Shown: positions 16,823 through 36,433 of the stretch, piece by piece
Position numbering within the stretch: position 1 is the stretch's first letter
How the letters are laid out: each line of letters begins with the position of its first letter
NCBI GenBank assembly: GCA_900088475.1
Contig: FLMG01004170.1
Coordinates: forward strand, 1-36,985
Source of the DNA: Hyphochytrium catenoides
Taxonomy: Eukaryota; Protista; Hyphochytriomycota
DNA length: 36,985 nucleotides
Direction: 5' to 3'
Translations under genes and position numbers: made by a program
Notes under the pieces: generated by a model
The model's database searches: none
Seen by the model: the letters and a program-made list of their open reading frames with translations, nothing else
What the model was told of the DNA's origin: nothing

Positions 16823-18159
16823 ATGCCGAAGAAGCTTAGCGCTCTGGAGTTCTATGGCAATTATTATGGCCACACCGTTGAACACTTAGAAGTCGTTCTC
16901 TCTCATTTTGGAAGGGAAAGTGACGAGCAGCAGAAGAGTTGTCTTGAAAGAGGAACTGCTAGACGTGAGGACGGCGCCCGAGACTCCAATCGTTCCATCA
17001 TCTTTTTGGTCGGAGACTCATCGTTGGACAACAAGCACTGGCTCTTTCCCGGGTATATGAAGACAGGGGAAAGGGTGATGTTTGACTCAAGCTTCACGGC
17101 TGACGCTCCTGCCCAATATAAAGAAGTTTTGCAGCCCGCAAGGGCAGTGAAGGTGCATTAACTGGAATAAGAAAGATAGGACTCTGTTGGTTCATCCGTG
17201 AAAGTTTCTCTTCGTGCTCTCGTTGTCTGTCATCATCATCAAAGCCGTGTTGCCTATCGCAACCGCTTTAATGCGCCATTGCTCCTCTGCGCCTTGCCTT
17301 CGTTGTACCAGACCTCTCTCTTCAAATGACCTATTGGCCTACGGCCACGATAGAGCAGCTGTAAGGCTGGCTCTAGCCGCACGCTTTCTTCTGGGTTTCT
17401 TCCTCTACACCATGCTCTTGCCCATTAACTCCAATAGTACCCACTCACGCTCCACTCTCTCGTCTGCAGGACGTTGCTTACTGGTTGAACGCCATGTCCG
17501 CGGAGACGCCTGGCATTGCAGTCATCAATGCCGCCGTGGAAGAGTCAACACTTGCTGATCGTTCTGTCTCTCTTCTAGATCAGGATGAGGTCGTCCGTGC
17601 CTCTCTACGGAAGGACGATATCCTCATTGTCTCTATCGGAGGAAACGACATTGCTCTTCGTCCCTCTCCTGCCACCCGTCGTAATCTCGGGCTCCTAATG
17701 CAGTCTCCTCTCTCCTTGATAGAGACAGGAGATGCTCCGGGGCTGAATTACTTCACAACGATGTTCCACAAGGACATCGAGAGATATCTCACTCGTCTCA
17801 CGGACCAACAGAAGCCCAAAGCGATTCTTGTCTGTATGATATACTATCCTGACGAGAAGGGAAGAGGAAGCTGGGCTGACGCGTCCCTCTCTCTCCTGGA
17901 TTACGAGGACCATCCTCAAAAGCTCCAGCTTATTATTAGAAAAGTCTTTGAGCTTGGGACAAGCCGCGTGAGATTAGAGGGAACAAGCGTGCTTCCTGTC
18001 CCTCTCTATGAAGTGCTGGATGGTAAAGATCCTGGGGACTATGTAGCTCGTGTGGAGCCGAGCGTTGAAGGAGGAAGGAAGATGGCGGAGCTCTTTCTGA
18101 GGTACATCAAGCAAGGAGAAGAGATGCGCAAGGCAGAAGAGAAAGCGAGAGAGTCTTAA
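16823..18159 (+). CDS. SGNH/GDSL-like hydrolase, 2 exons (16823-17152, 17470-18159); possible upstream in-frame ATG at 16706
   Basis: The junction AAG|gtgcat...ctgcag|GAC joins AVK to DVAYWLN in phase 0. Motifs are block I LVGDSSLDN, block II NAAVEEST, block III IVSIGGND, and DYVARVEPS at the block V position. Confidence 0.82.
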
Positions 18160-18436: not shown

Positions 18437-21400
18437 TTAACGTCTCAGATCACTGAGATAGCGGAAAGCCACAAAAATCTTGCTCTCTAGCTCTTCTCCC
18501 CTCTCATTCTGGAGGTGGAACTTGCGCGCCTTTCTTCGCCTTAGCACGCCTTCGACCACTTCCTTCGTCATTGCAACCTCCAATCCTTCCTGCACATCTC
18601 GAGAGAGGGGAGCTTCCTCGACTGTTTGTGCAAGAGGTGGACGCGTCTCTCCTTCTCCTGCAGGAGCGTCTTGCTCTTGGTTGGACTCTAACATAGCGCC
18701 GCTCTCTCCTTGCTCCCACTTTCGGTTCCGCTCTTCATTTGTCTCACTCTCGTTTTGTCTCTCCTCTTCCGGGCCTGAAGCAGCAGCCTTCTTTTCCTGG
18801 TCACTCTCTTCACCCGTCTTCTCCTCCTCTTCTGGTGGGTTGTTCTCTTCCTCATCCTCATCCTCGCTGTCATTTTCCGTAGACTTTGACGAGGTTCGGA
18901 GCTTGTCTTCTCTCTCCCTTCGTTGCTGTACAACTGTTTCTACGAGGTTCCTGCGCTCTATCTGGGAGGCGAAGTCTGCTTTCTTCTTCTTGTCCTTCTT
19001 AGTCGCGTGTATTTTGCTCACTGCCAGCGCGGCGGCGCGGTGGTCCTCCTTATCAGCTAAAGCAGAGATAGAGCATTCACGAAACTCTTCAAAGATCTCT
19101 TGCAAGGGCTTCGTAATCTGTCCCAATAGGACCTATAGGAGACGGCAGCAGCAGAACAGAATGGATCGTCAGTGCCATATTAACAGAGGTAGAGACATAG
19201 CAGAGCCAAACGAAGGCGAGCAACATGGACGATCTGTTATCTTTTGAAAAACGAGAGGAGAAGGCGGCGGGCCACGTATAGAATGGAAAAGGCCAAGACG
19301 AAAGTCAATGAGGTGGCCCTACCTTAGGCTGCAGCGGTCTTTCATCGTAGACCTTGATCATCACTTCTGCCTTGGCAGAACGGATGTCAAAGGTAACAGC
19401 CTCATTCCACTCAGGAGACTTGCTCCGGATCTTCCTTGTTTTGAAGGTCTCAACCGTCCTCCACTTCTCTTCCTCGAGCTGATGAGGAGCAGGCTCCCGT
19501 AGGAAGAGACGAATCCTCGCGTGCGGTGCGGTAGAGGATGGAGAGAGGGCCACAGCTTTCCATAAGACGACCTCCAACTTTGTGATGACGTTCGTCTCTG
19601 AAAGAGGTTTCAAGGCTTGTTGCTCTCCAACAAGAGCACGGGAGGGCCGGCGAGGTCCCTAAATAGAGAGAGGAAGAGAGAACATCAAATGCAAGGAAGG
19701 AGGTGGAGCAGAGGTCATTGCCTGAACAGGCTCCTCCACTAGCTCGGCAGGATTTGCTTTTCAAACAGACGTTTTCTCGATCTCTGTTGGTATCCCTCTC
19801 TTCTCCTATCTTCCTGCTTCCTCTGCAAGTTCCGTACGCCTTCATACCTCGTGACGCGTATCATCCATGAGATGAATCGTGCTATCGACAGACTTAGCCA
19901 CTTTCTCTCCAGCGCCAAGAATGCCTACGAATGGACTAGCAGCAAAGGTAACTAGGCCCTTGGCTGTGCCCTTGATCGCTCCTTTGGCGCCTTCTTGCTT
20001 CATGCCTTGCAGCGGCTGTTCAACCAACTTGCGAGCGCCATAACGGATCGACTTGGCGAATACCTGCATGGAAGGAATAGAGTTGCAGATTAGGGTCCCC
20101 CATCCAAGACAACATCTTGTCCGTAGATAGGCGTTTAGATATCCTGCTTGCTAAGAGTATAGAGGCATCCAGAGCTTGCACAGAGTCAGAAGGTGTCCGC
20201 TTACCTCGCCACCTTGCTTGAAGCCCTGGCCCAAGTGCTTGGGCTCCTCTGGTCCTTCTTGGTTCTCGAAGTAGGTCACACGCTTGACGGCATCTCCTAG
20301 TCCGTTTGTTGCTTTGCCAATGGCGACGGAAGGGGCTCCTATTATAGTCTGGAGGAGGATCTTTGCCCCTTCTCCCTTCTTGTCACTCTTGCCAGTAATT
20401 TCCCGGCCCGTTTGCCGGACAAAGCGTTTAAAGCCAGAGGCCACCTGTGTGACGAACAACAACGGAGAAAGAATAATGAACAAGGGTATCAACGACAGGA
20501 AGGCGCTTAGATGCGGGAGGAGGATGACATAGAGACATTGGAAAGGAGCAGAATGGCGTCCCCGCCGGCAGGGGTACTCTCAGAGAGGTGCTGATGCCCA
20601 AGTAGGGCAAACATCGCGGAAGGGCTCTGGCGCAGGGGCGGCAAATACTCAGCATTATGATAGGAGACAAAGACTTACATCATGGACAAATCCCATAGGA
20701 TCTCCCAGGAGCTCCACACTGCCAACAACCTTATACCATTGTCCCAGAAGCTGGTAGATAAACTTCCACGCCAGATCCATACCAAGGCCATCCGGAGAGA
20801 AGAAACGGGAGCGGTACGCAATGTCTCTGAAGTGGAAGGACGGCGTGATATGTGCGATGCCACCGATCATGTTTGCTATGGTTGCTGGCAGGAACTGCTG
20901 CAAAGCTGCAAACCAAGAAATGGGGAAGGCAGGATAGGTTAAGCTTGACAAAAGGCATCAAAGCATAAACGAAATGCTTGTAGGGGAGCCCGAAGCACAC
21001 AGCGGAAGAGTGGAAGAGAGAGATCAGTTCACCAGAGAGCTCATCCCGGTCCCAGGGACGTAACGAGTGCGTCTTTCGACCAGAGTGAGTGGATTATTGT
21101 TGCACACTTACCAGACTCATTGTTCTCAGGGTCAGAGAGGAAGACGAGATCGAAGTCAAAGGCTTTAAGGAAGAGTGCGTTGATGTACAGCTGCCTTCGG
21201 CTCACTTGAGGATCAGCCTTCACTGCCTTTCGCATGGCGAACTCACGACAGGTAGATTGCCCTGGATGACCAGAGAGATTGAGCGTCATAGACGTGAGAC
21301 GTAGCAGAGGGAGGTTAAAAGTGTCCTTTTGGAACCACTAGGCTACACGCCCAGACTTCTCCTTAACAAACTCATAAAAGTAACCGCAGGAAGGAGCACA

Positions 21401-24025
21401 CCCGTGCGAGAGAGCGGGAGGACTAAAAAAAAAAGCCGCAGGACGGTTTACCTTCTAGAGCCGCCTGCTGTGGGCTCTTCTGTGGCACAATCCTCATAAA
21501 GATGTTGGCCACTGTCAGCAGATAGTCCGCGTTGACCTGGCAGAGCATGTTGCCCAACCCAACATTCAATTGCTTGAGGAGGAAGATATCTGCCCGGAGA
21601 GACAGAGTGATAAAGAATGACGGAAGCGCGAAGAGTGGCAAGGAGAGGAAGGTAAGGTTTTAGATGGGGTGTGTGTGAGAGAGAGAGAGACAGGAGGTAG
21701 ACACGGACCTGTGCTTGGGTCTGTGTCCAGCTTTAACGTAAGGAAAGGTTTCTCCCCTTTCTCTGGCGTCCAGTTCTCTTGACGGTCAGACCTAAACCCA
21801 CTATCCTTGGGCACAAACACCAGCGGATACTGACTGCCTTCCGTCATATCATCTGATCAGAGAAAGAAAAGTAGAGGAAATGATCAGTAGCAACCCTTGG
21901 GACAGACAGAGAGACAGACGGACAAGGAGTAGGAGACAAACGCAGAAGAGGCAGCTTGTCCAGCGGAAAGGACAATACACGAAAAGAGAGAAAAGCCGAA
22001 CAGAGGCAGGAGAGAAGTAAACGAGCTATTGAAAGCATACAGAGCACAGCTGCAAAGAGAACGCGAACGCGTCTGCCCCTAAAGCGGGATAGAGGAGTAA
22101 AACCCCGGGAACTGAGCCAATATCCCTACCAATCTCCATGTGATGCAGACTGAGCTCCACCTTCCTCGACTTGGGCGGCGACTGGATGGCCAAATCCTCA
22201 AGATAAACAGTGAGAAGCTCTCTGGGGCGAGAGTCAATGATGTTCACGGTCACTCCCAAGAGGCGGACATCGACAGCCACGTAGGACAGAAAACTGCCGA
22301 TTGGGTTGTTAGACGTCATGAGTAGAAGAGGAGGAAAGCGACTAGAGTAACAACCAAAGTACAAAGCCAGGATCATCCGTCCTTAAGGAAGAGTCCGAAA
22401 GAAAGAGAAAAGGAAAGAGAGGAGACACAGGCTCCGTCGCTTAATAATCCTCAGACATAGGAAAGAAGGCAAAAAGAGGGATAAACACTTACCCTTCACC
22501 TTTCCGGGCGAGGTCATAGTGTGTGATAGGCGCATCCCTAAAGCAGAGCACGCGAGTGTTGTTCTCCACGTAGATCTCCGCATAGACATGGGTCATCCCA
22601 TCTAAGAGCCAAGAGAGATGATGAAAAGAGACAGAGCGAGAGGGGGTGAGAGACAGAGTAATGTTTGAGAGAACCAGAGCAAGAAGTACGAAAGACTGTG
22701 CGAACCGAGGAAACGCTTCCGCCTTGGAAAGGGCGAAAGTCACTATCAAGAGCGTGCACAAGAAGCGGGCTTTGCATTCATTCCCCCTTACCGTCAGGAG
22801 AGAAGACTGGCAGGGTCTTGATCTCAGACAGCTTGACCCTAAAGCGCTGCTTCCCGACCTTGACCTCAAGCTCAAGATCCTCATTTCCCCCGCTTCCCTG
22901 GCTCTCCCAGGCCCAGGAAGCCCATCGGAGGGGCTCGAGCGAGACAGAAGTTGCTCCTTCCAGTCCGGCTTGATGGTAAGTGATGGAGTGCTTCGTGCTC
23001 CTGAGAGATAAAAATAAGAGAGAAGGAGATGATCCATCGTCAGGTATACGTGGGCTTAGGCTACATTTCCCTCTTCACTTAGTCTCTCTAAACTCCTTAC
23101 TTATTGTCAATCCGGAACGGGGGCTTCTCGGTTACATCCTCAATGACGATGTAGGAGGTTGGACCCTGCATCGAGACGGACAGAGAGAAAAGAGGACCGT
23201 CGCCCTGCACGCCCTGAGACCATAGGAAGATATCCCGGTCCTCGTCTACTGGCAGAAGCTCCGACCAGCCAGCATTAGCAGAGGCATCTGTAAGAATAAA
23301 CAGCAATATGATGCAGAGTTCAGTTAGCAAGAACCCCAGACAAGGTTGAAAATATTGACCGTGGTATCTCTTGGGAGAGCCAGAGACGTGGAGCTCTTAC
23401 CTGACGGTGAGCTGCTGATATCCTTCAGTCTAATGCCCTTCTTTTTGTCCTCCTTGCCATAAAACTGATAGAGAATGGCGCTTTCCCCTGCCTTTACTTC
23501 CAGCAGCTCCACGTTACGCCTCGTCTTCTCTCTTTCGTCCATAAAATCGACTGTTGCTCCCTTGCGGCCGATGTTCAGCGGTGCAATCTTCAGGAGCTGC
23601 TTGGTGTTATTCTGCAAAACGTATCGTGGATGCAATGTGACGATCTTTGTCCGTAGATACTGCGCCGGAGCGACTTGAACTTCGTATGCCAAGGTGTAGG
23701 AGCCTTTGTTCTCAATGGTTCCAGGATATCCCACGCTGCATAAAGACAGAGCAAGGTAGGTGAGGACAAAGAAGAAAGAAAGAAGAAGAGAGAGATGGGG
23801 CGCCCGCGCCCGAAGACTGAGAGAGAAGAGAGAGAACTTACTTGGTTATGTCCACAGAACTGCTCCAGTCAGGCTTGGGGTCCGCGATCTTCGTTTTTGT
23901 CCGTGGGCTAAAGCCTGAGAGCCAGTCATTGTTGTCTCCTTCTTCAGGATCGGTTTCTGGAAGAATTGAGAGCTTCTCTTTGTTGTGATGAGAGGTCATG
24001 ATGATAGGAACCTGGGGGACAGCCA

Positions 24026-24056
<31 letters not shown>

Positions 24057-26979
24057 AGAGCATGGTGACAGACGCTGACGGTTAGATAGTAGTCTAGAGA
24101 CACAAGCAGAAGAAGCGGCAACAGCACTGGACTCCAGACCAGTCTTTCAGAAGTAGTAAAGACTCAGAAAAGCCAAAGACAGCAAGAGACGTGCATGTCG
24201 TCTCTCTTTTTCCCCTTCTCTCTCTCTTCTCAAAGTCCGCGTTGCGGGAATACCTCGTTATTGTTGAATATCTCCCTATTTTCTCTGTCGCTGGTTTGCA
24301 AGCTTGAGGCCTTGTATCGCATTGGCAGATTCGTCTTGTTGAACAGCCAGAACGAGGCAGAAGCCACTAGTTGAGGAGTGTGGCCCTCGTACCACGTGGG
24401 CACCAGCTGGAACTCGATCGACGGCGGGAAAGAGATCTAAGGCGAAGAAGAGGGTCAGCGCAGTAGGGCAGGTCCTGGATATAGGCTAATCTAACATGGG
24501 ACAACCGAAGAAGAGAGAGGAAGGAGTAAAAACGACAGCTGCAAGAAGAGAGAGGCCATAAAAGAGGAGGAAAAGAAAGAGGTCCATACCGACAACTTTG
24601 TGGAACAGAAGCTCTTCTCTCCTCTGCTGAAGAGCGGGATCCAAATATCCTTGGACCAGTCCGTAAACTTCTCTTCCACCCGCGTGGGGTGCAGTCTTTC
24701 CTTTTCTTCTTCGTCTCCTTGTCCGTCCCGCGTCTCCTCTTCATCCTTAGACTTTCCAGAGACGAAGTTGTTCATCAATCTGACCCGTAGCCAAGCGTCC
24801 TTGCTCATGGTCAGCCCCGAAATCTGTTGCTTTTGTCCCGAGTCCACCATGCCTTTCCGCGCATTAACTCCCGTCACAGCATCAAAGAGCTCGTCCAAAC
24901 GTCCCTTTCCACCGCGTTTGTCTCCTCCTCTACTTCGCCTCCTTGATCGTCCTCCTTCGGATGCTTCGTCTCCTCCTCCTCCTCCGCCTGAAGTCATGGA
25001 AGAGAGAGTATCGCTCGCTCTTAGGTCTCCTCCGCCAGCGCCTGAGGCTGTGGAAGGGTTGGTGTCCGCGGAGGCCGCGCTGGCTCTCTCAGAAGATTTC
25101 CCGGTCGCCGTCAGACTTCCATCAAGATCTGCAGATGGTCTCAGCCCGCGCTGGCTCTCCGGCTCTGGCTCGTCCTGGCTAAAGTCTGAGAACTCATCAT
25201 CGTCCTGGACAATCTTATATTCCATTGCCACGGGCAACGTATTCTCAAAGATAAACTGAGGCAAGATGTTGATCTGATAGTCAAAGCAGCTCTCCTGGTT
25301 GTTAACGGTATGTCTGGTCATGGTTAGCGGCTGCTCATCTATCCTGTCAGCCAGTGGGAACGTGAAGTTACCGTCCTCATCGGTGACCTTCACCGAGGAC
25401 GTGGTAGCTGACTCTTGCGCCTTCTTCTTCTCTTTCGCAATCTTCTCTTTCAACGCCTTGTCTTCGTCTTCTGTCGTGGTGCGGAGCTTGAGCTTGTTGC
25501 TCCATTCTTTCTCACCTACTTGCCTGATGGCGTAGTAACCCTTGTCAACGAGAGGAAGAGGAATGGCGATGCGATCGCAGCCAGCTACAGAGAGGAAAGG
25601 CTCTGTTCCACTCTTTCTCGCAGCTTCGTCAGGTCGGTCCCTTGTCAGCTGTCGTTCTTCGCTATCCTCTTCTTCCTTCTCTTCCCTAAGGCGCCCAACC
25701 TTAGATCTCCAGGTCTGAAGATCTTCCCCTGCGGGCCCGACAACTTTCTCGTTCTCATCGTAGAACTGAACCTCAGTGACGGAAGCCATGGCATTGCGGA
25801 TCTGCAGATTTGATCTCAGAGAAGCGCAGAGGCCGTTGGTGGAGTCGGAGGTGAAGTGAACAGCGATCCGCTTTGGAGACACTGAGGCCAGACAGCGCTG
25901 GATATAACCCTGCACCCTTCCATAGTTGTTTCCATCCTTTGCTATTGAAAGCCTGAAGAGCCCGTAAGCTTGGAGGAGAGACGTCTCTGTTGGCGGCTGC
26001 TGGGTGTACAGCTTCTTCCCTAGCTCGTACAGCTCTTCCTCTGTCTCTTTCCCAGAGAGAGAGAAGGGCAGCTTTGGGATAAGCTCGTAGATGAGGACGT
26101 CCATGTTGTCCAAGCTAATGTTAGAGATGGGCTCGAATCCATCTATCTCCATCCTCATTGTGCGCCTAGCTTGCTTGGTACTTCTCTCGATGGCAGAGAC
26201 AAAGTGACGGAATGGAATCTCTTTCTTCCGCGGGTCTTCCTCTATCAAGTCTTGGTTTTCCTCTACGTCTGCTCTTCCTTTCTCTTTCTCCAGTTCTTCA
26301 TCTCTTGACTGCTGCGCAAGCTCAAGAAACCGATCAACTTCTTCCTTCAGTTGCTCCTCTGATAGACCTTTGGCCTTGTAGACGCCAGTAAGGAGGTCGC
26401 GGACTTGGTCAACGGAGAGAGAGCCATTCTCGTCCTCGTCTTCTTCTCTAAAAAGTGCGCACAGCTGTTTCTTCCTTGTCCTCTCTTGCTGCTCTTGCAT
26501 GTCTTCAAGGGTTTCGTCCTAGAAGCCAGTCATACGTTAGCCTTAGACCGCAGCAAGAGGAGAGACTAGTCTGTCTTCATGGTCATCTATCGTCCCTCTC
26601 GTGGTGTCTCCCACTTTGGGCATTGTCTCCTCTTCTAAAGTTCCTAACAGACCAGCGTTGTCCTGGGCAGTCATTTCCTCTCCTCTCTCCCTGTGTCTCT
26701 TCTGTCTCCGTCGACTTTTCTCTCTTCCCTCTCTTCCTCTCTCCCCATCTTTGGAATTCTCTCTTTTCATTCGTCCTTTCATCATGCAGCGCCTGCGTCT
26801 CCCTGTTCTCTCACCTTGATAATACAGGGCTTCCATTGCAGGTGTTCCAGCTCCACCGGAGGGTTGGGCCTTGCGTCAGACTCCTGGGCGATGGACTCTA
26901 CCACGCACACGACGCGGTAACCAGTTTGGTTGTGCACCTGCAAAAGAGAGTGTGTTTGTTCGTTTGTGTGTGTGAGAGC

Positions 26980-27013
<34 letters not shown>

Positions 27014-30000
27014 GAGAGAAAGGGAGGGGGTAAGGGAAGAGAATGAGCAAAACCATTAGTGAAGAGGCTGTATATCATGCGGAAAAGGCTGTGGCAAGGG
27101 ACAGGGATGTGAGAGAAGGTGTGGTCGTATGTACAAGATGATGTTCGACCCATGTAGAAGAATGAACGTCGCGTACGGCCTATCACAGAGACAGAGAAAG
27201 AGGAGCCAGAGAGAGAGAGAGAGGTTGAGAGGGTGCATACCCAGAATAGCCCTCCAATGTCATTGATGTGTGGCCGCTCTTTCTCCCTTGGCTTCAGCTT
27301 GGATGAGAAGGATTCAATGGTCGCCTTCACATGCTGAAGGAAAGAGGAACGACAAGAGGAAGTGAGCCACTCTATGAAAGAACGGTACAATGAATAGGAG
27401 AAAGAAGCATGCTACCAACGGAAACATAAGGGCAGCGCAAAGAGACAGAGAGAGAGAGATTAGGAGAGAATAATAACTAGAGAGAGCAAGAGAACAAGAG
27501 AGAATAAGAGCTAGAGAGAGCAAGAGAAAGAGCCCAACCTTGAGGAGTGCGTCCGTGCAGTTGATGTTGAAATAATAGCGCGAGAGCAGCTGCAAGTTGA
27601 GGTCCGCGTTGGGCTCTTTGTAGAGGGCAAGCTGGCCTGAAGAGTAGGAACAGCACACGTGAGGCAGGGTCAACATAAGGAGGGAACCGTGATAGAGAGA
27701 GAGAAGGAAAGAGAAAGGAGAGAGAGAAAGAGGCACAAATTTAAGGAAAGGCCGGTAGATGGACAGTTGGAGGAGCATGGGTGAGACAAGACCGGGAAGA
27801 GAGATATATAGAGAAGAGATTGACGGAGCACGATAACCCAAAAAATGAAGGGCAGGGTGAAGGAGAAGAGAGAGGAGAGAGGCGAGGAGAATGGCAAGGA
27901 TTGTCGCGGGGATACCTCCGTAAGGCTCAATGAAAGGCTCCATGGCTTTAACGCTTGCATTGTAATACTCGCCACGAAGGAAAAAAGAGAGAGAACAAGA
28001 CACAATATCCTGGAGATGGGAAGAACAAGGAGAACGCCAAGGGGAGAACATTTCGTCAGGTCCGGTCGCTAATGACACCCGCGGGGGAGCGGAAGAGAGA
28101 GAGAGAGAACGCACCGAGACAGGTAGCAGCTAAGACTTGTTTTATCAAGCCAAAATGAGTCAGACACACGATCCAAAGAGAGAGAGAAAAGGGGAGAGAG
28201 AGCGAAAGAGAAGACAGACGCTTATTCACCCTTTTCCCAAAGTAAACGAGTCTCTTACCTGGGGATAAAAGAGCTGCCCTGGCGCTTTCTGCTGGGTCCT
28301 GTCAGGCGTTCCTCCTTCCCAGATAGCGAGACCCACCAGCAGATTAACGCCTTCGACAGAGAATCTCAGGGCAGACTGGCCGGTAGGCAGACGCGGGTCA
28401 TGGAGAGAGACATCGAGCCCGCCAAACTCTGTCTCTACATCCGTGCGGACAAGCATCGGTCTCCTCTTTCTCTCTCTCTTCTCTTTCTCCCGCTCTCGTT
28501 CTTCGTCAGTCAAAGAAGTGGCAGAAAGTTCTAGCACTTTTTCCATAAGCTTCTGCACCTCTGTGACCCCTTCAATAGGAGAAGAGCCTCTTAGAAGCCA
28601 GGGAGAGCGGTCTGCTCTGGAGCGGAGAAAGGGAAGAATCAACTTCTTCCAGGCCTTCCGTGCAAAGTCGTGGGAGCGGAAGAGACGGACTAGTTTCTCC
28701 TGGATGATCCTGACAAGATCGACAAGGAGAAACAGCGATAGAGCGCCATTAGTTACGGTCTTAATAGCCAGACAGAAGAGGAAGAGGATCTCTAAGAAAT
28801 AACTTTCAGTGAGAATAAGGCACAGAAAGAATTGTGAGAGATACATTCGCTCTCAAAAGCACACGCAGCTGCAAAACAGAGTCAAGCATTGAAGCTCCAT
28901 CGATTGCTTTCTTGCCACTTACAATGGGCTCTGTCCATTCAAAGACTGGAGAGTGACCTCGCATTCGCGCTGGTAGATCTCATAAAAAAGTCGAAGGGAG
29001 AGCTTTGTGACTTCCTCACTTCCTTCGGGCCCATAGCGCGCTCTGGCGGCACTGTGAAGCTCAAAGAGTCTCTTCTGCATTGCTGCAAGGGAAGCAGCAG
29101 GCTTGTCCTCGCAAGAAGCAGGAAGAGAGGCATCGTCAGAAGTCGAAGTGTCTAGTGCCGCCGGACTCTTTCTTTGCGATGACTCCTCGGAAGGCTGTGA
29201 CAGCGCTGCTTGCACTTCAACGGGCGTTCCTTCTCCAGGGTAAACGGTAGGGAAACGCGTTAGTTGCTCCTGAGTGACTTCGTCTCTTCTCTCTGCTTCC
29301 TGTCGGTGCTGCTGCTCGGCCTCAAGCTCTTCTTCTGGGATGTCTGAGGAATCCAGCACAACGCCTGCAGCTTCATCGACGCTCAACAAAATATCTTCAC
29401 GGAGATCTTCAGATGCCTCGTTACCAGGGTCAAGATCCGCATTGGCGCCTCCTCGGGTATCCGTCCGCGGCCGGCTGCTAGGTCCGATGACGACGGCATT
29501 GTTAGGATTATATCCGCGCGACCATAAATCTTCATCCAGAATCTCTACTGGAGCGCGTCCGTAGTAAAAATGGCTGGGATCTGAAAAATCTCCGATCTCT
29601 TCCGGACGCTGCTTTGAGATGATCTCTGCATATTTCTCCGCCAGCTCCTTCGTATAGAAGTTGTCCGCGTATTCCTCAGCCACAAGGCGCGCATGGCCCT
29701 GATGTTTCTGCTTGTACTGCGTCTCTGAGGGATCCATAAAATGAAGGAACTCCTGGAGAGAGATGTCTCCACTGTTGTCCTCATCGACCACGGAGAAGAA
29801 CTCGTGCACCATCTCCTCCAATTCTGTGATAACAAGCAGGATAAGACGAAACGGGAGAAGGGGAAGCGGGAGAGAGATAGACAGAGAGAGAAAGAGAAAA
29901 GGAGACAAAGCGAGAGAGAGAGAGTGGCAGCGTAGGTGACGTCAAGGTTACGATAAAGTCAGCAACGGGTTTAAAACGATAAGAGAACGAGCACCAAAAC

Positions 30001-32399
30001 GACGGAGAGCGAGACAGAGCGGAACAAGAGAAGGAGAGAAAGCAAAAAGACGCAAAAGAGAGACCTCTCTAGCCACGCAGAAGCCAGAATGTACCTGTTA
30101 GCGTGATACTCTTCTTCATCACGCGGAGGAGAAGCTCCTTGATCTCCTCTCGGGTGAGAGAACCCGTCTCATTCTTATCAATGTCTTCGAAGATTTCTCG
30201 GAATCGCTTCAGAGACGCTTCTTTCTCTTCCTTCTTGAGCTCTTTCTCTTTCTTCTCTCTCTCTTTCCTTGCCTCTTTCGTGCTCTTTGTGTCCTCCATC
30301 GCCGACGAAGCCATACGTTTGCCCATAGCTAACAGCAAGGCCACATCGTCTTTGGAAAAATGTATGGAACAGACTTTGAACTTGGCATAAAGACAGCGCT
30401 GAGCCCTTGGAGGCTCGATGAGAATGTCTGAGGGCTCTCTCCCGTCAATATCGGAAGAAGAAGGGTGAGGAAGAAATGTCGGAGCCTGCAGGCTTTCTTT
30501 CTCTTCCTTCTCTTCTCCTTCCGCTTCTTTCTTTTCACTGCCTCTCTTCTCCGCCATTCTGCCCCCTGCGTCCACGTCGTGGACACGAGGAAAGCGCTCT
30601 TCCTCTTTTGAAGAGAGAGTCTCTTCCTTCTTGTCAAGGTAAGTTTTGAGCGCAGACTCCTCTCTCTTGCTCCCGTCAGAGAGTTTGAATGGAGCTTGGG
30701 ACTCTTGGGAAGGAGAGGAGGAAGATTGGTGCAGAACAACTGCCTTTCGACCTTCTACTTCTCTCTTCTCCTCTCCCTCGCCGCTTTCTTTCTCTTCGTC
30801 TCCTTCTGCCTCCTCATCCAACTTGATTAAATGTGTGTCCAGCACAATGTCAATGTCAGGACCAGGGCCTTGAGGCAAAAGAGTCGGGAAGAGGGAAGAC
30901 CGTACACACACGTTAGCCTGAATAATTTTAGAGATAGATAGAGAGACAAGCCCAGGGTATCAGAGAGAGAGAGAGAGTGAGAGAGAGAGAGAGAGAGATG
31001 CGGAAGACGTTTCGTACCTGATAGCTCGAGCAAGCTCCTATTGGTTTCGGGCTTTGTAAACTTGATTCCTCTCTCTTCCGCCTCAATAGAACAAGGTTCC
31101 AGCGTCACCTCGTCAAGCTGAAGAGAGATCTTCTCTCTCTCTTGACTGCTCTCTATCTCAAAGAAGAGGGAAGATGACAGGCCGATGGTGTGGCTCTTCT
31201 TGACACTAGAGGGGGCAGAATGAGAACAGAAGACGTGAGCAAAATCAAAAAGCAAGATCGTGACAGGCGACGAGGAAAGGCAAACAAAAAGAAGAACTGC
31301 GACGGTCTGTACCTCTTCCGGCGGCCTCGTAGCTCTTCTTCTTCTCTCTCTCTCTCCTCTTTCTTTCTCTCTTTTCCTGTTTCCCCGTTTCTCTCTCTAT
31401 CTCTCTTCTCACCTGTAGTCGAGGGCCGCGACAACCTCCACGCCGGTGATGGCCAGTCCGACCATCACAGCGGAGAGATCAATCACATTCTTGGGAATCA
31501 GAGAAAAAAGCAGAACCGGACTGTATGGCTGGACATCGTCCCTAACATAAACTATAGGATCCGGATGCCGCCGAAGATTTTCTGGCGGCTTTCTGGGCTC
31601 GAACTCCTTTGGAAGAGTGTACAGCGCGCCTATGAGGTCCTGCGCCGCCTCCATCACGGGCTCAACATTGGCAATGATTGAGAAATCCTGGAGCTCAAGA
31701 GAGCACTCCGCTATTCCATTGGCGAGGATGCGCGAGTTGAGGACGAGCATCTTCGAGCATTCTGGGTTCTTATCCATCAGACTCTTGAAGACGTTGGCGG
31801 AGGACTCTCGGCTGGGGTGAGACAAGGGGATGAGACACAGAGGATAGCGGAATTAGAGTGAGAGAGAGAGAGAGAGAGAGAGAGGGACAGAGGAGAGACA
31901 GCATCTTGGAAGGTATAAAAAGAGAGAGGAGGAGAGGAAGAAGAGGAAGCGCTTACTCATCCGTGAGCCTCAGTCTCTCCAATTCCATCGTCAGTCCGAC
32001 CCAAGGCGTTTCTCCCTCCATGTCATACAGTCCAACAGCGCCTCCAATTCCAAGGCCCTCTATGGACAAAGTTAGCAGCTTTCTCTCTCTTTGTGCTCTC
32101 TCCTTCGTCTTCTCCTTTAAGACAGAGACAGAGAGGGAGTGCAGCTGGAAGTCCAGAGTCACGCAGCGGACGAAGAGATTCGAGTCTTCAAACTCCTTGA
32201 GCGAGTGGTCATACCACCTTCCACGCCAAGAAAAGCGAAAGAGAGAGAGAGAGAGAAAGGGAGAGTAAGAGAGAGAGAAAGAAAGGAAAGAGAATGTGAA
32301 TGAACAGAGCAAGTTAGTCAACACAACCCACGAAGCTACACAGAGAGAGAGTGGGAGGGAGAGCGAGAAGGAAAGACAGAGAGAGAGACAAACCCAGAT

Positions 32400-32430
<31 letters not shown>

Positions 32431-34902
32431 CCCACCCGACGGTCTTGCTGACAAGTGTCATAAGGTCCGCTTCTAGAGATGCCTCTGATGGCGCATCTTT
32501 CACCTTCTCTCCCCCCGAGGGCACATTGAACCGTCGCGCCATCGCTCTTCCTCGAAGTATTTCCTTGATCTCCATCTTCTTCTCCAACTCTGAGAGCTGC
32601 TTCTGAGTACGGACACGGAGAGAACGAGCAAGAGGGCCCTCGCCTTCTAGAATAGCAAAGCTGAAAGGAAGAAAGCGAGAAGTAAGCCAATATATATATA
32701 GGACTCACCAGACTACCTGCTCCATCTCTCTCTCTCTCTCTCTCATTCTCTCTCTCTCTTCGTTCCCGCGCTCTCTGCCTCTCTGTACCCTGGTCTTGCT
32801 CAATTTTTCTGTACCGGCAGGACTTTCTTGTTCCTCTCCTCTTACGTCTCCTTGTTCGTATGCCTCTATTTCTCCCTCTATATATAACAAACAGCGGTCC
32901 CTCTCTCCCGACTGAATCTCTCTCTCTCATCTCTCTTTCTCTTCTGCCCACTTTCTCCCTTCTAGATGTACATTGAATCCGTCTCCGGACCATGGCTACG
33001 TACCACTCTCGATAAGCTCGGAACTCTTCTGGTCTCAGCTGCATGAGAGACACTTCATCTGCCGCCTGGGCATGTGCCTTTCAAACGGAGACGAAAGAGA
33101 GTGAGCAGCAATCTCAGCAGCTATCTTTGGTATATAACCTTGCTGCCTCTCCAGTCTCTCTTTCTCTCTCTCTCTCTCTTCTTCTCTCTCTGATGTCCGT
33201 ACCTGCCAGTTTAGGAAATATTGCATGTGATCCCAGACGCCGAAGAGTCCTCTCAAAGTGTCAGGCTGAAGAGTGAGCGGGACATTTTTTATAGAGAGAG
33301 AAACCTTCACCAGCTTCAAAATTGGAGGAGAGAGACCGACAAGGAAATGCTGCGGACGCAGAAGACCCTGGAAGACGGGAGGCATCTCCACTCTTAGGTC
33401 CAACCGCATTGGCCGCAGAGCGTAAAAGTGTCTCTCCACTTTCTCCCTCTCTCTCTCGTTCTCCAGATCAATGGCTCGGTTCTCATAGTCAACCAAAATG
33501 ACCGCAAGATCCTAAGGAATAGACGTAACACACAGGGTTGAGTACAAAAGAAAACGGCGATCATCGTTCTCCTATGCAGCCTTTCTCTCTCTCCTTTCTC
33601 ATTTTCTCTCTCTTGCTCCTCTGTCTGTCTCTTTCTTCTCTCGATCTCCCTTTGTTAAACGTGCTTAGATTTGCCTTCCTGCAAATGCCTTTCCCATCGT
33701 GCCGACTTTGCTTCTTTTGCTCTCTCTCTCTCTCTNNNNNNNNNNNNNNNNNNNNNNNNNNNNNNNNNNNNNNNNNNNNNNNNNNNNNNNNNNNNNNNTA
33801 CTCCTTCCTCCTTCTTCGGGTTAACATGTCTCGCCGTCGTGTACTCTGTGTCCACATACACCGCCAGGCCATTTACCGTGAGATTCCGAAGCCGAGTGGT
33901 GGTCTACAGGGAACGGGACCACAGAGAAAGAGAGAAAGGGGAAAAGAGAGAAAGAGAGATGGATAGAGAGAGAGAGAGAGAGAGAGAGATATGAGATCAG
34001 GCCCAACCTTAGAAGAAATTAGGGCTGCTTTTCCGACGCACAAGGTATAATGAAAGAGGTAGATTACGTGCGGTATACGGACAACAGAGAATCATCAAAG
34101 CCTTACACGAGGGAAACACGGGAACGGAGAGAGAGAGAGAGAGAGAGAGAGTCAATCGGAGAACTGGGGAAGCGTACATGTGCCTTGATCTCTCCTTTCT
34201 CCAGCTGAATCTCTGCCAGTTCCAGCCCCACGGTGGCCATCTTAGCAGTGAACACGCGGACGGAGATCTCCTTCACGAGAAGAGAGAGATTGTCGATGAT
34301 GACGTCGAGCTTCTCCTGCCACCAGGGAAGAGATGGAGGTTCCTCTCCCTCGGACGCGTTTCTCTTTTCCTCTTCAAACTTCTGAGTTGTCTCCTGCGCA
34401 CCTTGCTATATATATAGAGAGAGGAAGAAAGCAAGAAAGAGGGGCGGTGAGTTGCTCATTAGCTGCTTATCTCTCTCTCTCTCTCTCTCGCTCTCCCTTT
34501 TTCTTTTTTCTCTCTCTTTCTCTCTGTCCAGCTTACAATTTGTTCCATTTTCTGCCGGATGGTGCTCCACAGCAAGTTTGCCTGGGCTATACGGGCAGCA
34601 CATGCGGCCTCCACTGCCTGACGGAACCGATCTGCGTTCTGCAAGAGAAGAGAGAGAGAGAGACAGAGAGAGACACAGAGAGAGAGAGAGAGAGAGATCT
34701 ATTTAGTTCAAGAACAGCACTTAAAGGTTGAGAAGATTGATGGCAAAGAAAGGAAGAGAGAAAGTAAAAAAAAATAAAGAAGAAGGTAATGCGCAAACGT
34801 TGAGAATGGAGACATGAAGGAGAGAGACATGAAGAAGAGAAGAATAGAAGCCCAACGGAGAGATGGCAGGGAGCGAAAGAGGAGGAGAGGCAAACACATA
34901 CT

Positions 34903-34946
<44 letters not shown>

Positions 34947-35295
34947 CTCCTCCAGCTGTGGGTCCCAGTAATCGTTCCCTTGAGACAAAAGATCGCAGGT
35001 GAGCCCCTCAACGTGGACTTCCACACTTCCTCCTCTGCCGAAGGGGCAAAATGATGCCCAGGAAGAAAGAGAGCAGGTGAGAGACACGAGGGAGAGAGAG
35101 ACAAGGAGAGAGAGAGAGAGAGAGAAGAGTAGTTAAGAAAGTGGAGTAGTGAGAAGGGAAGAGGGGAAAGAGAGAAGATCCCAAGGCAGCAACATCGGAG
35201 ACGATGAGGGGAGAAAAGAGAAGGGCATAGGAGACATCTGAACGAGAAAGAGAAGTGTGGAGAGACAAAGTCCAAAAGCAGTCATAAGGTTGAAG

Positions 35296-35329
<34 letters not shown>

Positions 35330-35513
35330 GAAAGGAGAGAAGGCGGTACCTGAAGACAGAGTAAGGGATTGTCAGGGAGAAGTGTCTGAGCTTCATGACG
35401 GAGAGAGAGTAAGGCAGGTAGAGATAGGGCGAGATGAGACGCAGGCCCCAGTCTCCCAAGTCCAGATTCTCGATCGTAATATTGGCTGCTAGAGAGAGAG
35501 AGCGTAAGAGAGC

Positions 35514-35574
<61 letters not shown>

Positions 35575-36288
35575 GTGGGAAAGCGTTGTGCCAATATGAG
35601 GGGAGAGGGAACACTGAGTGGCCGCTCTACCAAAAAAAAGGTATGGGAGAGACAACAGCAAGGAAGTCATAGAAGGTTCGGGAAAGGCACAGACAAGAAC
35701 AGAGAGAAAGAAAACAAAAAAAGAGAGAGAGAGAGACAAACAGAAAGAGAGAGACAGAGACAAACACAGAGAGAGAGAGACAGCGATCGCTGTAGAGTGA
35801 CGGAGGACCCACCTCGCAGCAAGTTTCCTCTGATTTTCACCGGGCTCCGTAGCATAGTCGCAGGCAGAAGCCTGAGAAGACGGAAAAAACGGAGAGAAGG
35901 AGAGAACACATTGGACATAGAGAGAAAGTCAAACAAAGGTGCGAGGCGGGAGGAAGGGAGAGTGCTCAAGAAGGAGAGAGAGAGTGATAGAGAGAATGAA
36001 AGCGCGAGAGAAAGAGAAAGAGAGGGGGAAACAGATAGAGGAAGTAATAACAGGAAATGTTGGCACAGAGCAGGGAGCAGGAACTCATCAATGGTAAGTA
36101 GAGAAAGGCAGAGAGAGACATCGGCACAGAGAGAGAAAGAGAGAGAGAGACACGGGGTAAGAGAGAGAGAGAGAGAGACAGCACCTGGCCAGCAAGGAGA
36201 GAATGGGTCCCATGAGGAAGAGAAAGGAGCCAACACCGGCCAATCCTGTCACCAGCGCCGTCTGAGACAGCGCCCCCACCACCGTCAT
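18437..36288 (-). CDS. VPS13: VPS13-family bridge-like lipid transfer protein, about 3,400 aa, 36 exons: hydrophobic N-terminal extension, chorein-N, RBG rod with EF-hand pair, six VAB repeats, ATG2_C-like region, C-terminal C2 domain
   Basis: Seen: a GT-AG exon chain with consistent phases, in transcript order 36185-36288, 35813-35871, 35350-35488, 34947-35034, 34537-34638, 34178-34405, 33802-33903 (3' end uncertain, abuts the N gap), 33203-33511, 32972-33077 and 32436-32643 (this junction uncertain), 31957-32217, 31413-31811, 31018-31205, 30095-30868, 28923-29823, 28259-28709, 27916-28009, 27539-27636, 27241-27333, 26815-26937, 24590-26518, 24254-24436, 23842-24011, 23401-23735, 23101-23287, 22792-23000, 22493-22601, 22130-22293, 21709-21852, 21452-21589, 21112-21261, 20679-20905, 20205-20444, 19848-20063, 19323-19658, 18437-19132. 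The total is 10,260 nt including the stop. VPS13 hallmark motifs occur in the correct order: chorein-N (NITIENLDL, FSLTIPY..VEVHVEG, IIDNLSLLVKEISVR, GLAVYVD), YYN..MEPFIEPY, the VAB Asn motifs (VHNQTGY, QIRNAM, FIFENTLP, FWLFNKTNLP, PRYVLQNNT, PFRIDN), GVTVNIID..PRELL, EIDD..YPLV, VGSVELLGDPMG, EQPLQGMKQEGAKGAIKGTAKGL and RRPSR. Confidence 0.93.
18440..19585 (-). other. C2 domain at the VPS13 C-terminus, probably interrupted by a long acidic insertion
   Basis: KLEVVLWKAVAL...FKTRKIRSKSPEWNEAVTF...VMIKVYDE...VLLGQITKPLQEI matches the C2 strand pattern (KT......P.WNE.F.F, V.D, LG). The terminal KFHLQ..GEELESKIFVAFRY resembles the last two C2 strands. Confidence 0.8.
26190..26470 (-). other. 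Second, partly degenerate EF-hand pair inserted after the first VAB repeat motif
   Basis: LFREEDEDENGSLSVDQVRDLL has an EF loop with Q at position 12. It is followed by the helix EEVDRFLELA, an expanded acidic loop, and EIPFRHFVSAI, which resembles the exit of a second EF-hand. Confidence 0.7.
29735..30215 (-). other. Canonical EF-hand pair within the VPS13 rod, split by intron 29824-30094
   Basis: The spliced sequence reads FREIFEDIDKNETGSLTREEIKELL...EMVHEFFSVVDEDNSGDISLQEFLHFM. Both 12-residue loops (DKNETGSLTREE and DEDNSGDISLQE) have D1, N/D3, T/S5, G6, a hydrophobic residue at 8 and E12. Confidence 0.88.
33736..33798. other. Assembly gap (run of N) next to a TC microsatellite inside the VPS13 gene
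   Basis: Run of n characters. It makes the 3' boundary of exon 7 uncertain. Confidence 0.99.
35517..35572. repeat. (GA)n microsatellite; longest of many intronic GA/TC tracts between 24 and 37 kb
   Basis: Directly visible pure GA run. Others lie at about 24035, 26980, 30965, 31860, 32405, 33965, 34130, 34905, 35295 and 36965. Confidence 0.97.
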
Positions 36289-36433
36289 CTTTTCCTTTTT
36301 TCTGTCTCTCTCTCTCTCCTTTTCTTCTTCTAGTCTTTCCTACGGCTCCAGTGTTCTATCTATGGATGTCTCTTCTCTCTCTTTCTTCTCGGCCTCTCGT
36401 TCTCCCCCTTGCCGCCTGGAGTTCTTCCTCTTG

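What the first reader, a model, noticed from the sequence alone, without database searches (positions are those of the whole stretch)
18437..36288. VPS13-family lipid bridge with a putative membrane anchor, EF-hands and a C2 domain: candidate Ca2+-regulated membrane-contact lipid conduit
Seen: the hand-spliced protein runs hydrophobic N-terminal segment, chorein-N, RBG rod carrying a canonical EF-hand pair, six VAB repeats with a second EF-like pair, ATG2_C-like helices, then C2. Established: yeast Vps13 and human VPS13A-D are peripheral proteins that end in a PH domain and have no EF-hands, while N-terminal transmembrane helices typify the Hobbit/BLTP2 and Tweek/BLTP1 bridges. Accessory domains are known in some plant and protist VPS13s, so single parts may not be new. 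Inference: this combination could be a membrane-tethered bulk lipid channel with built-in calcium sensing that binds the second membrane directly through C2.
Basis: partly seen in the sequence, partly recalled or inferred. Interest (0 to 1): 0.75.

Follow-up and report, generated by a model that had tools for sequence, protein, structure and literature searches.

The report
Membrane-anchored VPS13 with EF-hands and C2
This 18-kb, roughly 35-exon protist gene encodes a giant VPS13-type lipid-transfer bridge that carries its own membrane anchor, a calmodulin-like calcium-binding module and a C-terminal C2 domain; the design is shared with water moulds and I found no paper describing it.

Summary
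One minus-strand gene runs from the ATG at 36288 to the stop at 18437-18439. My provisional model has 35 GT-AG exons and 3,327 codons with no stop.

It is colinear over nearly its full length with a family of about 2,800-3,000-aa proteins from oomycetes. Shown by profile, pattern or fold tests:
- an uncharged hydrophobic N-terminal helix placed ahead of a chorein-N/RBG fold;
- one canonical EF-hand pair, split by an intron;
- a second, degenerate EF-like pair just upstream of the VAB domain;
- a VPS13_C/ATG2_C region, followed by a C2 domain where VPS13 normally has a PH domain.

The assembly gap (33736-33798) most likely lies in intron 7, so it does not disturb the frame.

- A transmembrane helix on a VPS13 already has a precedent: green-algal VPS13Y.
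- The C2 lacks the aspartate cluster of calcium-binding C2 domains.
- Only the first EF pair is canonical in this copy.
- Calcium control of VPS13 through calmodulin bound in trans was published in 2026, so this looks like a built-in version of that control.

The scan already reported the same design on other DNA of this genome (s1-338280). I found two paralogues, on contigs C3141 and C2997. No RNA evidence was obtainable, and function is inferred.

The parts
18437..36288 (-). Whole gene, from start codon to stop codon. The provisional model has 35 exons, 9,981 coding bases and 3,327 codons.
   Evidence: Family HMM hits are colinear from 35492 to 19323. Junctions were optimised and then curated by hand. 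The joined model, scored locally against the family HMM, gives 1839.5 bits over HMM positions 27-2776 of 2820.
36185..36288 (-). Exon 1: the ATG plus 34 uncharged, hydrophobic residues. This is the predicted N-terminal membrane anchor, running straight into the first chorein helix.
   Evidence: Every full-length family member that I aligned has an equivalent hydrophobic start. One shorter metagenome relative, P0014, may lack it. AlphaFold2 of a homologue gives one helix over residues 2-34.
33203..35871 (-). Exons 2-8: the chorein-N / first RBG unit.
   Evidence: HMM hits; hhalign 97.9% against the VPS13 N-terminus; PDB profile hits to 6cbc and VPS13C; Foldseek to 6cbc at E 6e-14 for the homologue model.
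33736..33798 (.). Assembly gap, most likely inside intron 7 (about 33512-33801).
   Evidence: Exon 7 (33903-33802) ends in phase 0 at a GTA that touches the gap. Exon 8 starts at 33511 after a strong pyrimidine tract and an AG. Paralogue C3141 has a phase-0 intron at the homologous position. No other contig covers the gap.
29747..30179 (-). Canonical EF-hand pair. Loop 1 is at 30141-30179 (exon 13) and loop 2 at 29747-29785 (exon 14). Intron 29824-30094 lies between them.
   Evidence: Pfam EF-hand_6, EF-hand_1 and EF-hand_7 hit the two pieces just below cut-off. Both loops match PROSITE PS00018. The same pair scores 79.7 bits in homologue P0001. In the homologue model it superposes on calcineurin B, troponin C and calmodulin lobes.
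26291..26470 (-). Second, degenerate EF-like pair at the start of the 1.9-kb exon 20.
   Evidence: EF-hand_7 gives 20.9 bits, E 4.6e-4. The loop at 26402-26440 has Gln at position 12, and no second loop is found. Nearly all full-length oomycete homologues checked have two canonical loops here.
22900..25700 (-). VAB (adaptor-binding) repeat domain; the limits are approximate.
   Evidence: PF25036 hits at 25199-25405, 23396-23692 and 23103-23279. The limits were taken from tblastn with P0004, whose VAB spans profile positions 98-566 of 570.
19848..21853 (-). VPS13_C / ATG2_C-like region (exons 28-33).
   Evidence: HMM hits of 55-110 bits. Family-level hhalign against canonical VPS13 C-termini gives 99.7%, E 1.8e-25. 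Pfam run directly on the window pieces found nothing.
18440..19658 (-). C2 domain in place of the PH domain. It comprises exon 34 (19323-19658) and exon 35 (18440-19132). Exon 35 holds a long acidic insert and a conserved extreme C-terminus.
   Evidence: PF00168 gives 29.7 bits. Weak PDB hits go to plant CAR, NEDD4 and synaptotagmin C2 domains. The last residues match the family's C-terminal consensus.

Best explanation
The locus is one intact gene for a divergent VPS13-family bridge-like lipid-transfer protein. It belongs to a subfamily seen so far in oomycetes, in this protist (three paralogues) and in unidentified metagenome eukaryotes.

Proposed working:
- The uncharged N-terminal helix, followed by a cluster of basic residues, inserts as a signal-anchor into the donor membrane, probably the ER. 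This fixes the chorein-N mouth of the lipid groove at that membrane.
- The RBG rod spans the contact site.
- An EF-hand lobe built into a loop of the rod binds calcium and changes the conformation or engagement of the bridge. It would do in cis what calmodulin does in trans on VPS13A/C.
- The VAB domain recruits adaptors.
- The ATG2_C helices, together with a basic C2 that does not look calcium-binding, hold the acceptor membrane.

Shown here: the gene structure, the homology, the domain calls, and the fold of the N-terminal 1,000 residues in a homologue. Inferred: membrane insertion and its topology, calcium binding, lipid transfer, and which membranes are joined.
For: One gene. The 14-member family HMM hits the minus-strand frames in order, from HMM position 53 to 2686. 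The curated model has GT-AG introns throughout and no stop, and scores 1839.5 bits. tblastn with three full-length homologues is colinear, including across the C2.

Anchor. The hydropathy maximum is 2.01, against 1.68-2.61 in the family and 0.86-1.09 in canonical VPS13s. There is no charge in residues 1-34, then five basic residues. hhalign puts family residue 28 at VPS13 residue 7, so about 20 hydrophobic residues are an N-terminal addition.

Fold. AlphaFold2 models of homologue P0002 have pLDDT 77.5 for residues 1-420 and 73.5 for residues 1-1000. They match the Vps13 N-terminal fragment 6cbc, the LPD-3 complex (9cap) and Atg2.

EF-hands.

VAB, C-terminal region and C2.

Calcium precedent. 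Calmodulin is a constitutive partner of VPS13C, VPS13A and fungal Vps13, and calcium changes the complex (PMC13430412).
Against: There is no transcript evidence. The only runs found held small shares of the query words, and nothing from them laid on 30900-36400.

Chorein-N and VPS13_C are not recognised by Pfam directly on the window pieces. They are recognised only through the family profile.

The structure models are of an oomycete-family homologue about 33% identical, not of this protein.

Some exon borders are provisional, notably exons 7, 10-13 and 17. Large low-complexity inserts could hide small errors.

The second EF pair is degenerate here, and this copy sits on a longer branch than paralogue C3141.

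A test of the EF lobe docking on the N-terminal part gave no verdict.
Confidence: 0.6

Rival explanations
1. The built-in EF-hand lobes are a structural replacement for calmodulin or centrin. On this view they are a permanent folding and bracing element of the rod, and the protein is not switched by calcium.
For: Calmodulin is reported as constitutive and as needed for the folding of Vps13 fragments (PMC13430412). In this copy the second pair has lost its canonical ligands without loss of the open frame.
Against: The first pair keeps two loops that fully match the calcium-binding pattern. Eight of the nine full-length homologues checked keep four such loops, and one (P0006) keeps three. That degree of conservation argues for selection on metal binding.
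Confidence: 0.22
2. The N-terminal hydrophobic helix does not span a bilayer. It could be a monotopic or hairpin insertion, an extended lipid-scooping helix at the groove mouth, or a cleaved signal peptide.
For: AlphaFold2 draws one continuous helix over residues 2-34 that merges with the first chorein helix. The window's segment contains Gly, Ser, Thr and one Gln. No dedicated transmembrane predictor was available.
Against: Hydropathy is above the usual 1.6 threshold in the window protein and in all 14 aligned family members. Basic residues follow the segment, and canonical VPS13s score far lower. TMHMM-predicted N-terminal helices are reported for VPS13Y.
Confidence: 0.13
3. This copy is a decaying or silent paralogue. 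The working gene would be the one on contig C3141.
For: C3141 matches the oomycete profile better: 446.9 against 284.7 bits for the large exon. It also sits on a shorter branch. The window copy has a degenerate second EF pair and long low-complexity inserts. No RNA evidence was found.
Against: All 35 modelled exons stay open over 3,327 codons, with consensus splice sites. The extreme C-terminus and the N-terminal motifs are conserved.
Confidence: 0.08
4. The locus is two or more genes, for example a separate C2 protein or a separate EF-hand protein, wrongly joined by hand-splicing.
For: There are no transcripts to prove continuity. An assembly gap lies within the span.
Against: Annotated single proteins of oomycetes carry EF-hand and VAB domains, and several also a Pfam-recognised C2, in the same order. 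They align with the window end to end. Both in-genome paralogues show the same order.
Confidence: 0.03

Closest known systems
Canonical VPS13 (yeast Vps13, human VPS13A/C/D)
   Same: Chorein-N start, RBG groove, VAB repeats and the VPS13_C/ATG2_C region. Calcium input through an EF-hand protein is also shared: calmodulin or Cdc31 binds near RBG1-2 (PMC13430412).
   Different: Canonical VPS13s are peripheral proteins with no hydrophobic N-terminal extension. Their EF-hand partner is a separate protein. They end in a PH domain, whereas this one ends in a C2. The canonical controls have no EF loop.
VPS13Y of green algae (Leterme et al. 2023, PMC10683392)
   Same: A VPS13 with a predicted N-terminal transmembrane helix and C2 domains. 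Its authors propose that it acts as an anchored tether, like extended synaptotagmins.
   Different: VPS13Y has two C2 domains between the VAB and ATG2_C regions and keeps the C-terminal PH domain. No EF-hands are reported for it. Here a single C2 replaces the PH domain, EF-hands are present, and no C2 was found in the pieces scanned between VAB and ATG2_C. The phylogenetic relation was not tested.
BLTP1 (Tweek/Csf1/LPD-3) and BLTP2 (Hobbit)
   Same: An N-terminal transmembrane anchor followed directly by an RBG rod. The 1,000-residue homologue model matches the LPD-3 complex at E 5.7e-18.
   Different: Those families have no VAB domain and no VPS13_C region. The sequence profiles here point to VPS13.
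Plant VPS13M1/M2 and VPS13X (Levine 2022, PMC7613979)
   Same: These are examples of VPS13s with extra inserted domains, such as a C2 in the first VAB repeat of VPS13M, or without a PH domain, as in VPS13X.
   Different: None of them has EF-hands or a transmembrane start. That paper does not use the term EF-hand at all.
Uncharacterised oomycete proteins (for example Albugo CCA20420.1, Aphanomyces XP_009825030.1, Saprolegnia XP_008620032.1, and Phytophthora entries)
   Same: Same order of parts and colinear over the full length. These are the true family of the window gene.
   Different: They are about 33% identical and 400-500 residues shorter. Nearly all have four canonical EF loops, against two in the window. 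They carry only automatic names such as 'EF-hand domain-containing protein' or 'hypothetical protein'.

Membership tests
VPS13 family (bridge-like lipid-transfer proteins) | Chorein-N / VPS13 N-terminal homology | tested here: met
   Family N-terminus against canonical VPS13 N-termini by hhalign: 97.9%, E 3.5e-13. PDB profile hits to 6cbc and VPS13C. Window exons align with the family HMM. Caveat: Pfam PF12624 searched over the genome gave no match in this contig.
VPS13 family (bridge-like lipid-transfer proteins) | Repeating beta-groove rod | tested here: met
   AlphaFold2 models of homologue P0002 (1-420 and 1-1000) show successive long-strand sheets. They match Vps13, LPD-3 and Atg2 structures. 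The result is carried over to the window protein by homology only.
VPS13 family (bridge-like lipid-transfer proteins) | VAB repeat domain, which separates VPS13 from ATG2 and the other BLTPs | tested here: met
   PF25036 on window pieces gives 35.4, 21.9 and 19.6 bits against a cut-off of 22.6. In the homologues it is nearly full length. The six repeats were not counted individually.
VPS13 family (bridge-like lipid-transfer proteins) | VPS13_C / ATG2_C region | tested here: met
   hhalign at 99.7%, E 1.8e-25, at family level. The window exons score 55-110 bits against the family HMM. Pfam run directly on the window pieces was negative.
VPS13 family (bridge-like lipid-transfer proteins) | C-terminal PH domain (typical but not universal) | tested here: not met
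   After the conserved end of the VPS13_C region the sequence is a C2 domain. No PH hit appeared in the last exons.
EF-hand calcium-binding pair | Two adjacent helix-loop-helix motifs with canonical 12-residue loops | tested here: met
   Two PROSITE PS00018 matches lie 41 residues apart. Pfam gives 23.2 and 23.5 bits on the two intron-split halves, against cut-offs of about 25. The unsplit homologue pair scores 79.7 bits. The homologue model shows structural matches to EF lobes.
EF-hand calcium-binding pair | Actual calcium binding | not testable with these tools
   This needs ITC, a calcium overlay or a mobility shift on the recombinant segment.
C2 domain | C2 beta-sandwich profile | tested here: met
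   PF00168 gives 29.7 bits, E 8e-7, against a cut-off of 22. Homologue P0002 gives 25.4 bits. Weak PDB sequence hits go to C2 domains.
C2 domain | Aspartate cluster of the calcium-binding loops | tested here: inconclusive
   There are only 2 Asp in the 112-residue exon, against 21 Lys+Arg. By eye, the loop positions lack the usual acidic residues in both the window and the family consensus. No residue-level alignment to a calcium-binding C2 was made.
VPS13Y (green algae) | TM-Chorein-VAB-C2-C2-ATG2_C-PH order | tested here: not met
   The transmembrane start and chorein are shared. However, no C2 was found in the pieces scanned between VAB and ATG2_C, and no terminal PH is present. Common descent was not tested, because no VPS13Y sequence was in hand.
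BLTP1/BLTP2 | TM plus RBG rod without a VAB domain | tested here: not met
   VAB and VPS13_C are both present.

The most novel reading that the evidence does not exclude
The EF-hand lobes are calmodulin captured in cis. They would dock on the conserved helices between RBG1 and RBG2, which in VPS13A/C hold calmodulin. With calcium they would open or close lipid entry at the permanently anchored end. This would be a self-contained, calcium-gated lipid bridge that needs neither a FFAT/VAP tether nor a free calmodulin.
Probability: 0.2. Interest if true: 0.8.

Novelty: new variant of a known kind. Interest (0 to 1): 0.55.

Why it matters
Bridge-like lipid-transfer proteins are a young field, and how their flux is switched is an open question. 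In 2026 calmodulin was found to be a built-in partner of human and fungal VPS13.

A natural family that fuses the EF-hand module into the rod, and that also replaces peripheral docking with a membrane anchor at one end and a C2 at the other, offers a simpler one-polypeptide system. It could be used to test whether calcium gates bulk lipid flow.

The family also shows that VPS13 has been rebuilt independently in several eukaryotic lineages: VPS13Y in green algae and this family in stramenopiles. The oomycete members are present in genetically tractable species, so the idea can be tested.

Tried and rejected
RNA support. The search for sequencing runs returned only three runs, each holding 7-10% of the query words. 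Laying them on 30900-36400 placed nothing. There is therefore no evidence on expression either way.

Docking of the first EF pair. I tested it on the N-terminal 25-430 of homologue P0002 with complex prediction. The result was no verdict (score 0.00) and is not evidence for or against binding.

Direct Pfam calls. There were no hits for chorein-N, VPS13_C or the first VAB strand on the window pieces, even at E up to 10.

A second contig to bridge the gap. None was found; only short repeat matches appeared.

Wider family members. Two further word-indexed searches added only unnamed metagenome proteins.

I replaced it with a pattern-based script.

Rejected readings. I rejected the two-gene reading, and I rejected the reading of the C2 as the calcium sensor.

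The joined protein. The spliced protein has no reference, so it was never sent to any search or fold tool. Database and fold work used single exons by reference, or homologue ids. The joined model was scored only locally, against the family HMM.
Full report
**Layout of the locus**

The region 18437-36288 holds many minus-strand open frames separated by (CT)n-rich stretches. Pfam scans of the stop-to-stop pieces gave five kinds of hit:
- EF-hand hits in two neighbouring pieces, 30072-30959 and 28922-29941;
- an EF-hand pair plus VPS13_VAB in the 675-codon frame 24494-26518;
- VAB in 23327-23845 (35.4 bits) and in 23100-23396;
- a C2 domain in 19308-19658 (29.7 bits, cut-off 22).

**Relatives**

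An exhaustive HMMER search with the 675-codon exon found only 16 proteins. The best are 32-35% identical and 2,200-3,000 residues long. Those with names come from Albugo, Aphanomyces and Saprolegnia. A further search added Phytophthora, Peronospora, Plasmopara, Hyaloperonospora and Thraustotheca. Their names are automatic, such as 'hypothetical protein' or 'EF-hand domain-containing protein'.

These proteins have two EF-hand pairs and a VAB domain, and several have a C2 that Pfam recognises. All the full-length members I aligned start with a hydrophobic stretch followed by a chorein-like motif.

**Gene model**

An HMM built from 14 family members hits the window's minus-strand frames strictly in order. 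It runs from HMM position 53 at 35492 to position 2686 at 19323. I optimised each junction for GT-AG, phase and HMM score. I then curated the N-terminus, the gap region, exons 8-13, exons 18-19 and the 3' end by eye.

The provisional exons, given as high-low window coordinates on the minus strand, are:
- 36288-36185, 35871-35813, 35488-35350, 35034-34947, 34638-34537, 34405-34178, 33903-33802;
- 33511-33203, 33077-33004, 32660-32436, 31811-31413, 31205-31018, 30868-30095, 29823-28923;
- 28709-28259, 28009-27916, 27636-27539, 27333-27241, 26937-26815, 26518-24590, 24436-24254;
- 24011-23842, 23735-23401, 23287-23101, 23000-22792, 22601-22493, 22293-22130, 21852-21709;
- 21589-21452, 21261-21112, 20905-20679, 20444-20205, 20063-19848, 19658-19323, 19132-18440.

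Together these give 9,981 bases and 3,327 codons with no stop. Scored locally, the model reaches 1839.5 bits against the family HMM over positions 27-2776 of 2820.

The least certain borders are exon 7, exons 10-13 and exon 17. The joined protein has no reference, so I did not send it to any search or fold tool. All such work used single exons or homologue ids.

**The assembly gap**

Exon 7 begins after a good acceptor at 33904. Its frame stays open up to the gap, where the last three read bases are GTA, in phase 0. Exon 8 begins at 33511 after a long pyrimidine tract.

Paralogue C3141 of the same genome has a phase-0 intron within a residue or two, by eye, of the same point of the alignment. 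The family sequence on both sides of the gap is in the right order and orientation.

The gap is therefore most likely intronic and does not affect the frame. One alternative cannot be excluded: the exon could run through the gap to a weak donor near 33661. No other contig and no reads cover the gap.

**N-terminus**

Residues 1-34 carry no charge. Residues 35-54 carry five basic residues and no acidic ones. The best 19-residue hydropathy mean is 2.01. The family gives 1.68-2.61 and four canonical VPS13s give 0.86-1.09.

Profile-profile comparison aligns family residue 28 with VPS13 residue 7 and continues for 333 columns (97.9%, E 3.5e-13). The hydrophobic stretch is therefore an addition in front of a true chorein-N. 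A profile search of PDB sequences finds the Vps13 fragment 6cbc and VPS13C.

AlphaFold2 on homologue P0002 gave the following:
- Residues 1-420 (pLDDT 77.5) form one helix over 2-34 and then sheets. The best structural matches are 6cbc (E 6e-14), the LPD-3 complex and Atg2.
- Residues 1-1000 (pLDDT 73.5) match LPD-3 over 837 columns. Its EF region superposes on calcineurin B, troponin C and calmodulin lobes at about 3 Å.

**EF-hands**

In the window, two loops match PROSITE PS00018, at 30141-30179 and 29747-29785. An intron splits the pair, which explains why Pfam scores the two halves just below cut-off.

The second pair, at about 26291-26470, lies just upstream of the Pfam-recognised VAB repeats. 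It keeps one loop, with Gln at position 12, and has lost the other. Eight of the nine full-length homologues checked have four canonical loops and one has three. Four canonical VPS13 controls have none.

**C-terminus**

The family's last 600 residues align with canonical VPS13 C-termini at 99.7% probability. The alignment covers the ATG2_C-type glycine-rich motif region and stops where canonical proteins begin their PH domain.

In the window a C2 follows. It starts in exon 34 and continues in exon 35, which has a long acidic insert. The protein ends with the same few residues as the oomycete consensus, which fixes the true 3' end.

The C2 exon has 2 Asp and 21 Lys+Arg. I read it as a calcium-independent, basic lipid binder. 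This is an inference from general knowledge of C2 domains, not a residue-level test.

**Paralogues and lineage**

The genome (61 Mb, 4,759 contigs) holds two further colinear copies, on C3141 and C2997. In a tree of the large-exon region the three copies form one clade (100/100), set apart from the oomycete and metagenome sequences. The duplications are therefore lineage-specific.

C3141 is the least diverged copy. The window copy comes next, and C2997 sits on a very long branch.

The scan had already reported this design on another piece of the same genome (s1-338280). That note prompted my search for paralogues.

**Literature**

- Levine 2022 surveys VPS13 accessory domains without using the term EF-hand.
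- Leterme 2023 describes VPS13Y as TM-Chorein-VAB-C2-C2-ATG2_C-PH. A transmembrane start and C2 domains on a VPS13 therefore have a precedent.
- Li et al. 2026 show calmodulin bound to helices between RBG1 and RBG2 of VPS13C, VPS13A and fungal Vps13, with calcium-induced changes.
- A search for bridge-like lipid-transfer proteins together with EF-hand returned only calmodulin-related work and reviews.

**Verdict**

This is a real, apparently intact member of an undescribed stramenopile VPS13 subfamily. It is a new variant of a known kind. Its interest lies mainly in the fused calcium module. The proposed function is not tested.

Noticed in passing
G000 contig C3141, about 63,300-75,900 (+), loci L020/L022; contig C2997, about 192,000-201,300 (-), loci L021/L023: Two further copies of the same EF-hand/VAB/C2 VPS13-like gene lie in this genome. 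C3141 is closest to the oomycete proteins. C2997 is highly diverged, with a branch length of 3.08.
   Followed up: partly
window 9401-10846 (-): A 482-codon open frame with a full subtilase (Peptidase_S8) domain, E 4e-41.
   Followed up: partly
window 17485-18156 (+): An open frame with a weak GDSL-like lipase match (22.8 bits, below cut-off). It converges on the 3' end of the VPS13-like gene.
   Followed up: no
window 18437-36288, introns throughout: On the coding strand the introns are packed with (CT)n microsatellites. Several coding or near-coding stretches carry (GA)n runs that translate as Glu/Arg repeats. This makes automatic exon calling error-prone in this genome.
   Followed up: partly
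genome-wide; loci L001-L008: A PF12624 search shows at least six other contigs with chorein-N/VPS13_N matches (C3870, C1442, C3571, C929, C3463, C4479). The genome therefore has a large set of VPS13/ATG2-type bridges.
   Followed up: no
protein P0014 (ENA metagenome, 2,384 aa): A shorter relative with an EF-hand pair and a VAB domain, but without an obvious hydrophobic N-terminus. The anchor may not be universal in the wider family.
   Followed up: no
window 3885-4283 (+): An open frame with a weak match to the PT disordered repeat; probably low-complexity sequence.
   Followed up: no
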